Under the pieces are notes generated by a model. It made no database searches, was not told the DNA's origin, and was given only the letters and a program-made list of their open reading frames with translations. A stretch of DNA of 64,000 nt, taken from the NCBI RefSeq assembly GCF_006345805.1, contig NC_043024.1:8556001-8620000 (forward strand), written 5' to 3'. The first letter of the stretch is position 1, and each line of letters begins with the position of its first letter. The translations under genes and the position numbers were made by a program. Positions 20,428 to 62,464 of this stretch are shown here, one piece after another. The DNA comes from Octopus sinensis (taxonomy: Eukaryota).

Positions 20428-20743
20428 GATCAACGAATTAAGGAATTAAACCAGACCTCTCCACAGACCTCCCCACAGAATCAGCCAGCTACGTATGCGT
20501 CGACGAACCCCTTCAGCAGCGGCCCGGCAGAGGCCCTCACCTCCGACCTGCTTCTCGACACCAGCCTGACGACCACACAGCCCGCGAAACCCATCAGTGA
20601 CCTGCTCGGTTTGTCAGCCTCCACCAACCCCTTCGTCGACAGTCTTCCCACAAATGCAGTGTCGCCAGGTCAAACCAACACAATGACTTCTATGGGCTGG
20701 ACAGCGAAGCCAGCATCCCCCGCCATGAATACCACAACCCAAG
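20428..20743 (+). CDS. PICALM: Exon, 316 nt, phase 0 to 1: [105 protein letters not shown]
   Basis: Acceptor gtctcttcccag|GAT, donor CAAG|gtatat. GC-rich open frame within ORF 20407-20796, with 2 NPF and 2 DLL motifs. Confidence 0.85.
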
Positions 20744-22006
20744 GTATATTCAACACAAAAATGCCGTTTTATATATGTGTATATATGTATATGTAGAACA
20801 TTTTTGTTTTATTATAGTTACATTTATTGATTTTTTTTTTGTGTGTTTTATGCATAGTAGTAGTTGTTGTTGTTGGTGGTGGTTAATCTTGACTGAGACC
20901 GATTGATTTTGGTCTGTAGCCATGCTGCGGTACTGTTTTGGAGTGGTTTTGTCGAACGGATTGACCCCTGTACATTTATTTTATTTTAAAGCCTGAAAGC
21001 CTGGTACTTATTCTATCAGTCTCTTTTGCTACACCAGTAAGTTATGGGGACGTAACAGAAACAAACCAACAACCAGTTGTCAAACGGTGATGATGGGACA
21101 AATATAAACATACACACACACACAGTGGGCTTCTATTAGTTTCCGTTTAGCAAATCCACTCAAAAGGCTTTGGTCAACTGGTAGCTTTAGAACAAGACAT
21201 TTGCCTAGGTGCCATGCTGTAAGACTGAACTCAGGACCATGTGCTTTGGAGGCAAACTTCTTACCCCACTACCACACCTGATCATGAAGTCAGAAGCTTG
21301 CTTCACAGCATGTGGTCTTGGGATCAGTCCCACTGCATGGTACCTTCAGCAAGTGTATTTCACTGTAGCCCTGGGCTGACCAAAGCTTTGTGAATAGATT
21401 TATTGATGGAAAGTGAGAGAAACCTGTTGTGTGTGTATTTGTTTGTCCCCTCCCCCACTACCTGACAACCAGTGTTGACTTGTTTATTATTTCTTTACTG
21501 CCCACAAGGGGCTAAACACAGAGGGGACAAACAAATGGATTAAGTTGATTATATCGACCCCAGTGCATAACTGGTACTTATTTAATTGACCTTGAAAAGA
21601 TGAAAGGCAAAGTCGACCTTGGCAGAATTTGAACTCAGAACATAGCAGCAGATGAAAAACCGCTAAGCATTTCGCCCGGTGTGCTAACGATTCTGCCAGC
21701 TCGCCACCTTTTGATTTTTTTTATGCCCCTGTAACTTAGCAGGTCAGCAAAATGATTCTGATGGAATAAGTACAAGACTTAAAAATAGGCACTGATGTTG
21801 ATTTGTTTGAGTAAAGCAAGGCCCCAGCATGGCCACAGTCCAAAGACTAAAACAAAGTCAAAGACAGGTGTAATAGTTGATTGGCAAACTTTCAAAATAG
21901 CTATTACTCCCTCATTGAGAAAAGTTCCTGTAAAAATTTACCGGCAAATGGCTTGGAATAAGAGGACAAAACCATATGAAGCCTAAATGGTTTGGGTTTC
22001 TTTTTC

Positions 22007-22611
22007 ACTAGCAGATGCACCTGTCCTTTGGACGGTTTAACATATAAATAAATAAATAATAAATTTTAAAAATGTGAAAATGACTAAAGAATATTCTGTT
22101 ATGCAAATATACAACCATATTGATTAAAAAAGTATGGAGAAGCAGTCAAAGTAAATGAAAAGACAAAATCCTTTCACTTTTATAATATTCACTAACCGAA
22201 ACCCTCAAACAATACACACACCAATACATATATAAAAAATATAGAAAGTAATAATGCACAATTATAATATAGAAATAAATGATAAACCCCCAAAATGTGA
22301 AAACCACTAAAAAATATTCTCTAATGCCAATATACAACCATACAAAAAAATAGCTATTACTCTTTCATTGAGAAAAGTCCCTGTAAAAACATGCAAAAAA
22401 GCTAAGTGCATACAGTGAATTAGAGAAAAACACATGTAAAACACCATTTTTCCCCAGTTTGTCCATTTACTCAGGAGTTCTGGGCAAAATGTTATAGTGT
22501 ATGACCATCTTGGGGACATAAGTAATGTGTGTGTAAAGTTTGGTGAAAATCAGTTGAGAATTATGGAAATGGATGCATTAGGCACACATACTGTGATTTA
22601 TATATACTAGA
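22007..22611 (+). mobile_element. Helentron/DINE-1-like non-autonomous element (HINE)
   Basis: 5' ACTAGCAGATGCACCTGTCCTTTGGACGG with a small hairpin; 3' ..gtgaaaatc..tttatatatactag. Confidence 0.45.
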
Positions 22612-23750
22612 CGATTTTAATTCAATTTAACTATGATTATAGAATTAATGTTAGGTAAAATAAAATTAAAACCAAAAAAAAAAAGGAGTATTGAAGATAT
22701 AAAAGTTCTTAGAGATAATATTTATTCCTATTTATATGGAACAAACTATATTGTAGTAGTTACCATTAGAGGAACTCACATTGGCTTTTTAAAAAGCATA
22801 TTTATTTTTATTGCTAGCTGGGTGGTAAATTTCTGCTACCTCCAGTGCCAAGACCACCAGATCACGTGACCATATATGGTTTTCTCAATGATGGACACCC
22901 AACTGTTCTATCTTTGGTAAGACCAAACATGGTCAAATACCTCTGTTGCTAATAGATATAAGAATTCTTGTTTTATAACGTCAATATAATCCATTTATTC
23001 CAGCGCTACACTCCAGTAAAGAAATATATTTCAGGATTAAGTTAAATGCTTCTAAATTTGGCTTTTCATTGAAAACAAGGGCAACGGATATTGAAAGAAA
23101 CTATCACCTAATTCTTTGTCCTTTTCTTTCTCCATGGGGCAGTAATAATTGTTCTGAAAGTCTTCTGATCATAATAGCTACATGCTTCACTAGTTGACTT
23201 AAATATTGGCTGTTGATAAGAGGAAAACACCTTTGTTTTTATATTTGCCAGCATATGATTTGAGGAAGATTTGGCTGTTATTTCTAGCACATCTGGAATG
23301 CTAGGCTGACTTGGTGACACTAAAGTTGTAGCATATTTGAGATCACATTGTTCTGAGTTCAAATCAAAGCATTTCACTGCTGCACATTTTTGCATTGGGT
23401 CAGCTCATTGAAGGGGACATCAAGTGCACCCTACGTAAAACAATGTCGGACCAGGAAGATCTGGGGATTATAAGAAACTGTTACTTTCAGTGGTTGAGGT
23501 AGAAGTGGGGTGAGAACAGGGTTATTAAAATAAACAAAACAGGTCCATAAAGCTAGCAAATATCTAATGTCGTGATATACGGGAGAAGTGAAATCTCACT
23601 GATATTTCATTCCAGGCATCTGGGCAGGGGCTATTCCTGACCCTCCTTACTCCTCTCTTTGAAGGGAATCTTTTCTTCACTGGACCCCTTGGCTCAAGCA
23701 TTTACATTGCTCTTTTTGCTTTACTGCAAGTCATACTAACTTGTTGTTAG

Positions 23751-60452: not shown

Positions 60453-60521
<69 letters not shown>

Positions 60522-62416
60522 GTGCATTCATACCATACAAATGTCTTTCTCAGTCATTCATCTCAGTTTTTTTTTCCTTTTTAGTTTACATTCACTACTT
60601 TTTTCTTGTATTTTTCATTTTAAGTCACTTTTCTTCCTTCTTGCTGTGTATAGAACAGTTTTATATGTGCTGAACAAATGACTTCCTCTTGTTTGGGGGA
60701 ACCCAACTCCAGTGCCACCACCACCAGTACTGTTACTACTACTTCTACTGTGTGCTACTAAAGTTTAAGCTTCGACCTTTTTCTGTCATGAGCACCAAGA
60801 CTCGTTAGGTGGGAATTTAACCCAGTTTAATTGAGACTACAACTCTCCCCCACTGACTGGGACACTGGTCCTTTATACAGTTAACTTCTCAGGTATTACT
60901 GGAACTCCTTTACAAATGTGTGAACTGGAGCAGCAACATGAAATGAAGTGTTGTTTTGCTCAAGAACACAACACATCATCTGGTCTGTCTGGGAATCGAA
61001 ACCTTGATCTTACAATTATGAGTACCACACCCTAATCACTTGACCACAGACCTTCCCAAAATATAAGTCATCAGAAACTATTTTATTCATCCCCCACCCC
61101 ATTCTTGGATTCACAGAATTGTATTTTGTGTCAATATACCTTGGGATATCTTTTGTAGTTCTTTACATTCTCGGGTTTAATTCCTGCCTGGGTCAACTTT
61201 GCAGAATTTCATCATTTCTGGGAGATAAAATGAAATAACAATCAAATATTGATGTTGAAATAATTGTAATTAACTTGCCATTTCCCTTCCAAATTGCTAA
61301 CCAATTTGCCATGATGTGCCTGATGTAGAAAGGATTATCATTATTATTATTATTATATGTTTGACTTTTGCTTTGTATTTTCACAAGTTGGCTCCAAGTC
61401 TCACCCAGAGACCTCAAGAGACAACAAGTTGGAAGTTTGTGTTGGTGTTATGCCTAGGATGCTATATATTTGGTTTTTGTACTTAATGTTGTACTAGTGA
61501 ATGTTTAAGAAACCATAAGAAAATTTTGTTTGTTTTAAAACTTGAGATTACAAAGAAAGTATTTTGCATAGGATATGAGCACTATCTTGAATTTCTGCCA
61601 TTATGGGTTTCCTGGTATCTGAAATAGGTAGCAATCAGCCCCTTTTGCTATCATTCCTAGGGCACATTATTATTATTATTATTATTAAGGTAGTGAGCTG
61701 GTAGAATTGTTCAGCATTATTTGGTCCGCCTTCATGTTCTGAGTTCAAATTCTGCCATGGTCGACTTTGCCTTTCATCCTTTCGGGGGTTGATAAATTAA
61801 GTACCAGTGAAGCACTAGGGCCAATGTAATCAACTTGCTCCCTCCCCCCAAAAGTTCAGCCCTTGTGCCTGTAGTATAAAGGATTGTTATTATTATTATT
61901 ATTAAGGCAGCGAGCCGACAAAATCATTAGCACACATTTCATCTATCTTCACGTTCTGAGTTCAAATTCCACCAAGGTTGAATTTACCTTTTGTCCTGTT
62001 GAGGGTTGATAAAATGAATACCAATAGATTTCTGGGGTTAATGTAATTGATTTTCTCTTCCTTTAACCAAAATGTGAAATCCTTATTATTATTATTTTGT
62101 TGTTGTTGTTGTTAGGTAATTTGGTTCCATCCTTTTTATAGTACAAGTTCAAACCCTAGTGGTGGATCAGCTTTACTTTTCGTTCTCCTGGGGTCGATAA
62201 AACGAATTAAGCCATCTGCACACCGGGGTTTCACTCAATCAACTGTGCCTTCAGATGTTTGGCCTTATGTAGATGTGAATCATCACCATCATCATCATTA
62301 TTGTCATCATCATCATCACCATTGTTATATCATCATCATCATCACCACCATCACTGTTTATATATTTATCGTTTAGGGCTAACTCTGTTGATATTATTTT
62401 CTCGTTTACTCTACAG

Positions 62417-62464
62417 GACTGCAGGACTTAACTAGTCCTGCAATGACCACTGGATCTGACCCAG
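62417..62464 (+). CDS. PICALM: Probable exon, 48 nt, phase 1-1: GLQDLTSPAMTTGSDP
   Basis: Branch-like ctaac, tract ttttctcgtttactctacag|GA, donor CCAG|gtacta. Open in phase 1. Confidence 0.65.

What the first reader, a model, noticed from the sequence alone, without database searches (positions are those of the whole stretch)
20428..62464. Run of symmetric phase-1 cassette exons: a combinatorial kit for the AP180/CALM disordered tail
The five exons after 20743 (69, 108/105, 255, 45 and 48 nt) are all multiples of 3 and all end in G before GT. Any subset keeps the frame, giving at least 32 possible combinations. The disordered tail of AP180/CALM carries clathrin/AP2 motifs and influences vesicle size. 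Invertebrates typically have one gene for both roles, so splicing could tune tail length between CALM-like and AP180-like forms by cell type. I know of no description of this for cephalopods.
Basis: partly seen in the sequence, partly recalled or inferred. Interest (0 to 1): 0.7.

Follow-up and report, generated by a model that had tools for sequence, protein, structure and literature searches.

The report
Frame-preserving exon array in AP180/CALM tail
This stretch holds the middle exons of a cephalopod clathrin-assembly gene (AP180/CALM/LAP type) whose lengths let them be skipped without breaking the reading frame, an old and already annotated design in other invertebrates, and whether this animal actually skips them is untested.

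Summary
The window carries part of the disordered tail of an AP180/CALM/LAP-type gene on the + strand. The ANTH domain and the conserved C-terminal exons lie outside it.

All five segments exist as described: open in phase 1, bounded by AG and G|GT, of 69, 108/105, 255, 45 and 48 nt.
- **Confirmed exons (69, 108, 255 nt):** an mRNA contig from a related animal joins them in this order. The 69-nt peptide is conserved across phyla.
- **Unverified candidates (45 and 48 nt):** that mRNA goes straight from the 255-nt exon to the next conserved exon. The 48-nt candidate has good splice sites and exon-like GC content. The 45-nt candidate is hardly better than chance.

The run of phase-1 exons ending in G|GT is old:
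- Lottia has four in the same position and Lingula eleven.
- RefSeq isoform models of Lingula and the crinoid Antedon include or skip such exons in combinations.
- In Antedon this includes the counterpart of the 69-nt exon.
- Human PICALM has comparable tail cassettes.

The "kit" reading is plausible, but no transcript from this species was available, and 32 isoforms is arithmetic only. I rate it a new member of a known kind, of modest interest.

The parts
20428..20743 (+). Tail exon E0 (316 nt, phase 0 in, phase 1 out). It encodes DQRIKEL..., with 2 NPF and 2 DLL motifs. It is not symmetric, so it cannot be skipped alone.
   Evidence: Acceptor cccag|GAT and donor CAAG|gtatat. tblastn to Pomacea LAP-like X13 gives E 2e-5. 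Lottia has a counterpart at L002:6718-7039 and Lingula one of 301 nt, both with the same phases. Motifs counted.
28340..28408 (+). 69-nt phase 1-1 exon encoding AGESAFTTDAAFAAAFPNSSVST. This is the conserved F-x-x-D-A-x-F-A-x-A-F block, which I align by eye with the vertebrate CALM VDFESVFG AP2-binding stretch.
   Evidence: Its 3' end is contiguous with the 108-nt exon in mRNA contig L001. Conserved across orthologues: score 59 against a shuffle maximum of 47. Lottia counterpart is 72 nt, Lingula 93 nt. Antedon has a 23-aa (69-nt) cassette that is present or absent between isoforms.
37559..37666 (+). 108-nt phase 1-1 exon encoding a Ser/Thr/Ala/Pro-rich spacer. It has a tandem acceptor (CAG|CAG); the alternative start at 37562 gives 105 nt and removes one Ala.
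   Evidence: blastn to L001 shows 82% identity. L001 contains the CAG, so it represents the 108-nt form. Four GCATG motifs lie within 300 nt.
48102..48356 (+). 255-nt phase 1-1 exon. It encodes an acidic ELEDLLDPLEALDPL stretch (one DLL motif) followed by seven degenerate [R/P/A]-P-[V/A]-S-P repeats.
   Evidence: tblastn to L001 gives 82% aa identity, E 3e-44. A weak Lottia counterpart runs 9867-10184 (318 nt, phase 1-1). Motifs counted. No DNA-level tandem repeat was found.
57296..57340 (+). Candidate 45-nt phase 1-1 microexon ([15 protein letters not shown]). Unverified.
   Evidence: Bounded by tttacag| and AAAG|gtacag. Splice score 3.9, which about eight control-strand candidates equal. Unique sequence, GC 0.51 against flanks of 0.31. 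Absent from L001. No significant similarity to any orthologue.
62417..62464 (+). Candidate 48-nt phase 1-1 microexon (GLQDLTSPAMTTGSDP). Unverified but the better of the two.
   Evidence: Joint top splice score (8.7) of 1737 phase-1 candidates, against a control-strand maximum of 7.1. Unique sequence, GC 0.52 against flanks of 0.25. Absent from L001. No significant similarity to any orthologue.

Best explanation
The region is the middle of the disordered clathrin-assembly tail of this animal's LAP-type AP180/CALM gene.

**Shown.**
- E0 and the 69, 108 and 255-nt exons are true coding exons.
- They belong to an old array of symmetric phase-1 exons, each ending in G|GT. The array sits between two conserved anchor exons: the EQR-I/V-KEL exon (phase 0 to 1) and the GF-D/N-AFGDVLQP exon (enters in phase 1).
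- Because every member ends in G, the junction codon is set only by the downstream exon. Any member can therefore be left out with no frameshift and no change of the junction residue.
- In other invertebrates, annotated isoforms use such members as cassettes.

**Inferred.**
- Here the array most likely gives a small number of isoforms rather than 32.
- These would differ in spacer length, in one DLL clathrin motif, in the seven PxSP sites of the 255-nt exon, in one Ala at the tandem acceptor, and perhaps in one or two small distal exons.
- The effect would be to change the number of binding motifs, and possibly phospho-regulation, between the NPF/DLL part and the conserved C-terminal block.
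For: - **Exons and their order:**
- **Family:** the relative's mRNA continues into GFNAFGDVLQP...DLDLSLAQMAASLNI...KKTGGANW...NDPFGAL. The Lottia tail model lies next to an ANTH/ENTH model. A profile search gave 76 hits; 8 of 10 long ones have Pfam ANTH, and sources name them as this protein.
- **Conserved architecture:** Lottia has phase 1-1 exons of 72, 318, 33 and 162 nt, all ending G|GT. Lingula has eleven consecutive phase 1-1 exons of 21-93 nt, all ending G|gt.
- **Cassette use elsewhere:** Lingula isoforms X1-X8 differ by exactly these exons. Antedon X7-X10 show all four combinations of the 69-nt counterpart and a 31-aa cassette. In different species, short forms join the 69-like block directly to GFDAFGD (P0005, P0050), while long forms insert about 370-430 aa (P0008, P0054).
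- **Literature:** human PICALM exon 13 is a cassette carrying DPF and NPF motifs, and an isoform lacking exons 18-19 exists (PMC9776874). D(L/I)(L/F) motifs bind clathrin and NPF motifs bind EH domains; squid AP180 binds Eps15 (PMC4194041).
Against: - No transcript from the window's own species was available.
- The one related mRNA includes the 69, 108 and 255-nt exons together, so they could all be constitutive.
- The absence of the 45 and 48-nt segments from that mRNA fits non-exons as well as skipped exons.
- The isoforms in other phyla are RefSeq models. I did not inspect their read support.
- The ANTH part of this gene is outside the window, so the link rests on orthologues.
- The 108, 45 and 48-nt peptides show no similarity outside cephalopods.
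Confidence: 0.6

Rival explanations
1. Inherited architecture with no regulatory use. The 69, 108 and 255-nt exons are constitutive in this species. Their shared phase is just conserved intron phase from an old, probably duplicated, exon array. The 45 and 48-nt segments are chance open frames with splice-like ends in a long intron.
For: - The only related mRNA includes all three verified exons and neither small one.
- A clearly spurious candidate at 35758-35805 reaches the same splice score as the 48-nt segment.
- Chance candidates of 45 and 48 nt are numerous.
- The 45-nt score is matched by about eight control-strand candidates.
- In Lingula the 69-like exon is present in all eight isoforms.
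Against: - Homologous arrays are annotated as alternatively spliced in Lingula and Antedon.
- After filtering for unique sequence, GC of at least 0.48 and a splice score of at least 3.9, the control strand yields 1 of 5554 candidates. The + strand in the right phase yields both small candidates as well as the real exons. That threshold was set after the fact at the 45-nt candidate's own score.
Confidence: 0.3
2. The two small segments are real microexons, specific to the lineage or to particular tissues such as neurons. They would be the main variable part, while the three larger exons are constitutive.
For: - Lingula has 42-nt and 21-nt exons directly upstream of the GFD exon, and the 42-nt one is alternative.
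- Lottia has a 33-nt exon in the same interval.
- The 48-nt candidate has the top splice score. Both candidates are GC islands in unique sequence.
- Both are absent from one relative's mRNA, as expected of alternative exons.
Against: - There is no sequence similarity to any orthologue (p 0.14 and 0.63 against shuffles).
- There is no transcript evidence.
- The 45-nt splice score is ordinary.
Confidence: 0.35
3. The peptides belong to a different gene, not an AP180/CALM homologue.
For: No ANTH domain is in the window, and Pfam finds nothing in the tail.
Against: - The exons are contiguous with the family's C-terminal signature in L001.
- The Lottia counterpart is adjacent to an ANTH model.
- ANTH is present in 8 of 10 long hits, and sources name them as this protein.
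- Orthologues of E0 and the 69-nt exon sit in the right order inside full-length ANTH proteins.
Confidence: 0.02

Closest known systems
Human PICALM (CALM) tail cassettes: exon 13 and exons 18-19
   Same: - These are frame-preserving cassette exons in the disordered tail of the same protein family.
- Exon 13 carries short endocytic motifs (DPF, NPF), so its inclusion changes the partners bound (PMC9776874).
   Different: - Exon-by-exon orthology with the window's 108 and 255-nt exons is not established.
- The human cassettes are shown experimentally, the cephalopod ones are not.
- I could not check the exon phases of the human gene here.
RefSeq isoform sets of invertebrate PICALM/LAP-like genes (Lingula anatina X1-X8, Antedon X7-X10, Pomacea up to X13, Lineus up to X15)
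   Same: - The anchor exons are the same, and the run of phase-1 exons ending in G|GT lies between them (mapped in Lingula).
- The isoforms differ by whole exons of this run.
- The Antedon 23-aa cassette is the counterpart of the window's 69-nt exon.
   Different: - The number and sequence of array members differ: 11 in Lingula, 4 in Lottia, 3 to 5 here.
- These are computational models from other phyla and say nothing direct about this species.
Drosophila LAP and C. elegans UNC-11
   Same: Each is a homologue described as present in all cells and enriched at nerve terminals, and each controls synaptic vesicle size (PMC4194041).
   Different: - I have no gene-structure data for them here.
- From memory, UNC-11 has several splice forms (Nonet et al. 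1999). That paper was not held, so this is unchecked.
NAGNAG tandem acceptors
   Same: The CAGCAG at 37556-37561 would add or drop one codon (Ala). The relative's mRNA contains the CAG. Lottia has AAGCAG at its 255-like exon.
   Different: Use of both acceptors in this species is not shown.

Membership tests
AP180/CALM/LAP clathrin assembly proteins | N-terminal ANTH domain in the same gene | tested here: inconclusive
   No ANTH-coding exon lies in the window; the upstream intron exceeds 20 kb. The evidence is indirect. The Lottia tail model lies 4 kb downstream of an ANTH/ENTH model on the same strand, and 8 of 10 long tail-profile hits carry Pfam ANTH.
AP180/CALM/LAP clathrin assembly proteins | Disordered tail with D(L/I)(L/F) clathrin motifs and, in invertebrate members, NPF motifs | tested here: met
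   E0 has 2 DLL and 2 NPF motifs, and the 255-nt exon has 1 DLL. Motif roles are taken from PMC4194041. Pfam finds no folded domain.
AP180/CALM/LAP clathrin assembly proteins | Conserved C-terminal block (GFDAFGDVLQP ... DLDSSLA ... HQWQPKGE.K.TGG ... NDPFGAL) | tested here: met
   The block is present in the relative's mRNA directly after the counterpart of the 255-nt exon. It is shared with Lottia, Pomacea, Lingula and others. It is not inside the window.
AP180/CALM/LAP clathrin assembly proteins | Conserved F-x-x-D-A-x-F-A-x-A-F block upstream of the GFD exon | tested here: met
   The 69-nt exon peptide scores 59 against orthologues, compared with a maximum of 47 for 200 shuffles.
Alternatively spliced cassette exon | Length a multiple of 3, with the same phase on both sides | tested here: met
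   69, 108/105, 255, 45 and 48 nt, all phase 1-1.
Alternatively spliced cassette exon | Both inclusion and skipping seen in transcripts of the same species | not testable with these tools
   No transcript data for the window's species were reachable. The single related mRNA includes the 69, 108 and 255-nt exons and lacks the 45 and 48-nt segments.
Alternatively spliced cassette exon | The orthologous exon is alternative in other species | tested here: met
   This holds for the 69-nt counterpart in Antedon (present in X7/X9, absent in X8/X10) and for array members in Lingula. It was not shown for the counterparts of the 108 and 255-nt exons.
Microexon (about 51 nt or less) | Transcribed and spliced into mRNA | not testable with these tools
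   The 45 and 48-nt candidates have plausible splice sites and exon-like GC content. They have no transcript or conservation support.
NAGNAG tandem acceptor | Two AG acceptors 3 nt apart, both in use | tested here: inconclusive
   The CAGCAG sequence is present. The relative's mRNA shows use of the upstream AG. Use of the downstream AG was not seen.

The most novel reading that the evidence does not exclude
The run of phase-1 exons ending in G|GT, lying between the EQRIKEL exon and the GFDAFGD exon, would be an ancient bilaterian array that can grow or shrink between lineages (3-5 members here, 4 in Lottia, 11 in Lingula). Animals with a single AP180/CALM gene would use it to set tail length and motif number by cell type. 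In cephalopods it would include two new small exons, and a 108-nt exon flanked by GCATG motifs that could be controlled by a neuronal splicing factor.
Probability: 0.3. Interest if true: 0.45.

Novelty: new member of a known kind. Interest (0 to 1): 0.3.

Why it matters
**If splicing is confirmed.** It would show how an animal with a large nervous system and apparently one LAP-type gene could vary the clathrin-assembly tail between cell types. The variable features would be motif number, spacer length and phosphorylation sites.

**Most useful result here.** The comparative finding is that the frame-neutral exon array sits between the same two anchor exons in a cephalopod, a gastropod and a brachiopod. 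By protein comparison, a crinoid shares it too. This explains why the tail length of this family varies so much between species and isoforms.

**Limits.** The principle is already known from human PICALM and from public isoform annotations, so the finding is incremental.

Tried and rejected
- **E0 alone against the protein collection:** no hit.
- **Whole predicted tail as query:** one hit only, P0001.
- **Chimeric query (45 + 48-nt peptides plus the relative's C-terminus):** returned only P0001 and Lottia P0002. Nothing matched the small-exon peptides. The collection holds very few cephalopod proteins, so this negative says little.
- no ANTH exon and no C-terminal block in the window.
- **tblastn of all 89 retrieved homologues against the window:** only E0 and the 255-nt exon hit. 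No further LAP exon appears in 1-20427 or 48357-64000.
- **Scan for an upstream exon ending in phase 0:** the best candidate, 16450-16493, enters in phase 1. Where mapped, orthologues leave the preceding exon in phase 0, so I rejected it.
- **Small-exon peptides against orthologue variable regions:** not significant (p 0.14 and 0.63). The validated 108-nt exon also fails (p 0.52), so this test cannot decide.
- **Eye-level resemblances:** GLQDLTSPAMT against Pomacea GLSDLQIPGSPAT and Lottia HSPAMTGL, and TYMDNRDK against Lingula AYSDPKG. I did not count these as evidence.
- **Tandem repeat search in the 255-nt exon:** nothing at DNA level.
- **Pfam on the tail and on four transposon-like reading frames:** no hits.
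- **P0016 and P0021 look-ups:** these gave short genomic contigs with only the GFD exon or the last exon, which do not help with splicing.
- **Papers not held:** Nonet 1999 and Morgan 2000.
- **Literature search:** no paper on cephalopod AP180 splicing was found.
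Full report
**What the window is.** The sequence is AT-rich (about 31-43% GC per 2 kb) and full of TA/TG microsatellites and dispersed repeats. About 45% of it matches itself elsewhere in the window. Short GC-rich islands on the + strand are coding exons.

**Checking the observation.** I looked for every segment downstream of 20743 with these properties: preceded by AG, ending in G before GT, of the stated lengths, and open in phase 1.

| Segment | Length | Peptide |
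|---|---|---|
| 28340-28408 | 69 nt | AGESAFTTDAAFAAAFPNSSVST |
| 37559 or 37562-37666 | 108/105 nt, acceptor ctag\|CAG\|G | AGVMDMISPSN...SPAPPA |
| 48102-48356 | 255 nt | VHTELEDLLDPLEALDPL plus seven PxSP units |
| 57296-57340 | 45 nt | [15 protein letters not shown] |
| 62417-62464 | 48 nt | GLQDLTSPAMTTGSDP |

- Exon 20428-20743 is 316 nt. It enters in phase 0 and leaves in phase 1.
- The arithmetic holds: any subset of the five keeps the frame.
- Because each ends in G, the junction codon depends only on the downstream exon.
- The bare criteria are weak for short lengths. There are 13 candidates of 45 nt and 8 of 48 nt in the same interval.

**Which segments are real exons.**
- A protein search with the joined tail found one close relative, P0001, from a Logan assembly of run SRR32601320.
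- Its 1023-nt contig, L001, is an mRNA. Read in frame it gives ...AAFPNSTSITTT | AGVMDIISPSN...VPPA | VHTELDDLLDPL...KPPASPS | GFNAFGDVLQPQ...GDLDLSLAQMAASLNIG...KKTGGANW...NDPFGAL, then a stop and a 3' UTR.
- The 108-nt exon matches L001 at 82% nt identity. The 255-nt exon matches at 76% nt and 82% aa. The last part of the 69-nt exon runs straight into the 108-nt form that includes the CAG.
- So the 69, 108 and 255-nt segments are true exons, in that order.
- L001 goes directly from the 255-nt exon to the GFNAFGD exon. It therefore contains neither the 45-nt nor the 48-nt segment.
- The GFNAFGD exon is not in the window, so the intron after 48356 is longer than 15.6 kb.

**How much the two small candidates stand out.**
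- I scored all symmetric open candidates with a crude generic splice-site matrix.
- The 48-nt segment ties for the top of 1737 phase-1 candidates (8.7; best on the control strand 7.1). An AT-rich, evidently spurious segment at 35758-35805 ties with it.
- The 45-nt segment scores 3.9, about rank 21, and about eight control-strand candidates reach that.
- Both lie in unique sequence.
- Both are GC islands like the verified exons: 0.51 and 0.52 against flanks of 0.31 and 0.25.
- I then required unique sequence, GC of at least 0.48 and a score of at least 3.9. The control strand passes 1 of 5554 candidates over all phases. The + strand in phase 1 passes the 255 and 105/108-nt exons, both small candidates, and one other short segment at 26007-26030. 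The threshold was set at the 45-nt candidate's own score, so this favours it.
- My estimate is about 0.5-0.6 that the 48-nt segment is a real exon and about 0.3 for the 45-nt one.

**Gene identity.**
- No ANTH exon is in the window.
- The link to the family is nevertheless firm. A second hit, Lottia gigantea LOTGIDRAFT_154795 (P0002), is a tail-only gene model. It lies 4 kb downstream, on the same strand, of a model with Pfam ENTH/ANTH.
- A profile of P0001 and P0002, searched against 1.84 billion representatives, gave 76 hits.
- Eight of ten long hits carry Pfam ANTH.
- Sources name them [quoted passage not shown] in Pomacea, Lingula, Plakobranchus, Elysia, Tubulanus, Lineus and Antedon.
- In those full-length proteins the counterparts of E0 (EQRIKEL...NPF...PSDDLL.L.GNPF) and of the 69-nt exon (F-T/A-SDA-D/A-FA-K/R/A-AF) sit in the right order between ANTH and the GFDAFGD block.
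- The 69-nt peptide is significantly conserved: score 59 against a maximum of 47 for shuffles.
- By eye it aligns with the vertebrate CALM stretch VDF-E/D-SVFGNK (see P0023), listed as an AP2-binding motif in PMC9776874.

**The architecture is old.**

| Species | Entry exon (phase 0 to 1) | Phase 1-1 exons that follow, all ending G\|GT | Next exon |
|---|---|---|---|
| Lottia (L002) | E0-like, 322 nt | 72, 318 (AAGCAG tandem acceptor), 33, 162 nt | GFDAFGD exon, 157 nt, phase 1 to 2 |
| Lingula (L003) | E0-like, 301 nt | 93, 63, 84, 60, 93, 75, 81, 63, 87, 42, 21 nt (eleven) | GFDGFGE exon, enters in phase 1 |

The number and sequence of members vary.

**Cassette use in relatives.**
- The Lingula RefSeq isoforms X1-X8 (692-875 aa) differ by whole exons of this array. 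The differences are the 93-nt exon, the 93+75 pair, the 87+42+21 block and the 42-nt exon just upstream of the GFD exon. They also differ by a 21-nt phase 0-0 exon before E0.
- The Antedon isoforms X7-X10 show all four combinations of a 31-aa cassette and a 23-aa (69-nt) cassette, VMQTQVGANFDQAFGTASTKTSG. The latter is the counterpart of the window's 69-nt exon.
- Across species, some proteins join the 69-like block directly to GFDAFGD (P0005, P0050). Others insert about 370-430 aa (P0008, P0054).
- The numbering of the Pomacea and Lineus models reaches X13 and X15.
- These are annotation models, and I did not see their read support.

**Likely function (inferred).**
- E0 carries two NPF and two DLL motifs.
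- The 255-nt exon carries one DLL in an acidic stretch and seven [R/P/A]-P-[V/A]-S-P units, all kept in the relative.
- D(L/I)(L/F) motifs bind the clathrin terminal domain and NPF motifs bind EH domains. Squid AP180 binds Eps15 (PMC4194041).
- PxSP units are plausible sites for proline-directed kinases. From general knowledge, AP180 is a regulated phosphoprotein; I did not test this.
- Skipping members of the array would change spacer length, one clathrin motif and the phosphosite block. It would leave both conserved anchor exons intact.
- E0 is not symmetric, so it cannot be a simple cassette.
- The tandem acceptor would add or drop one Ala.
- Four GCATG motifs lie within 300 nt of the 108-nt exon, at -138, -11, +179 and +191. 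The window average of 1.31 per kb predicts about 0.8. This is a weak hint of Rbfox-type control.

**Comparison with what is known.**
- Human PICALM has many splice variants. Exon 13, a cassette, carries DPF and NPF motifs, and an isoform lacking exons 18-19 is described (PMC9776874).
- LAP and UNC-11 are described as present in all cells and enriched at synapses, and they control vesicle size (PMC4194041).
- I found no paper on AP180 splicing in cephalopods.
- The kind is therefore known and this would be a further member. The comparative exon-phase map is, as far as I could see, not written up, but it is a modest observation.

**Verdict.**
- Observation: partly confirmed. All five segments exist, three are proven exons and two are unproven.
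- Interpretation: partly supported. The gene and the frame logic are right. Cassette use is plausible by homology but untested in this species. Thirty-two isoforms is only an upper bound.
- Interest: 0.3.

Noticed in passing
window 37556-37561; L002 9861-9866: There is a tandem acceptor CAG|CAG at the 108-nt exon, and the relative's mRNA keeps the CAG. Lottia has AAG|CAG at its 255-like exon. A tandem acceptor thus turns up at two different exons of this array in two species.
   Followed up: partly
window 37421-37857: Four GCATG motifs lie within 300 nt of the 108-nt exon (-138, -11, +179, +191). One is a full TGCATG 11 nt before the acceptor. About 0.8 would be expected from the window average.
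   Followed up: partly
window 48156-48356: The 255-nt exon encodes seven degenerate [R/P/A]-P-[V/A]-S-P units spaced 9-12 residues apart, often followed by F-N/K/V. All seven are kept in the relative's mRNA. There is no tandem repeat at DNA level.
   Followed up: partly
window 35758-35805: This AT-rich (GC 0.35) 48-nt phase-1 open segment has a splice score equal to the best candidate. The relative's mRNA does not use it. It is a likely decoy and shows how easily pseudo-exons arise in these long introns.
   Followed up: partly
window 25875-26073: A GC-rich patch (0.47-0.54) holds several open frames with good splice scores in more than one phase. The peptides are Cys/Phe/Leu-rich, unlike the tail. 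Its origin is unknown.
   Followed up: no
window 16450-16493: This is the best splice-scoring candidate upstream of E0 (44 nt, VKLVHSLDIRESLQ). It would enter in phase 1, which does not fit the orthologues, where the preceding exon ends in phase 0.
   Followed up: partly
window 1-67, 26436-26516, 27553-27623, 49992-50051, 53300-53380, 57649-57714: A short dispersed repeat, about 60-80 nt matched at 89-93% identity and SINE-like, occurs in both orientations. It accounts for several false exon candidates.
   Followed up: partly
window 3797-4738, 10196-10792, 38288-38680: These long + strand open frames look like retrotransposon remnants. One contains LYRDDTLF, which recalls the reverse-transcriptase YxDD motif. 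Pfam gave no hit at E of 0.01 or better.
   Followed up: partly
L002 1-15423 (Lottia gigantea KB202953.1): The Lottia annotation splits the LAP gene into two models: an ANTH model and the tail-only LOTGIDRAFT_154795. The E0-like and 69-like exons (6718-7039, 7387-7458) lie unannotated between them.
   Followed up: partly
P0004 (703 aa): This protein model fuses MORC-type ATPase domains (Pfam HATPase_c_3, Morc6_S5) to a LAP tail from about residue 305. It is probably a gene-model fusion artefact.
   Followed up: no
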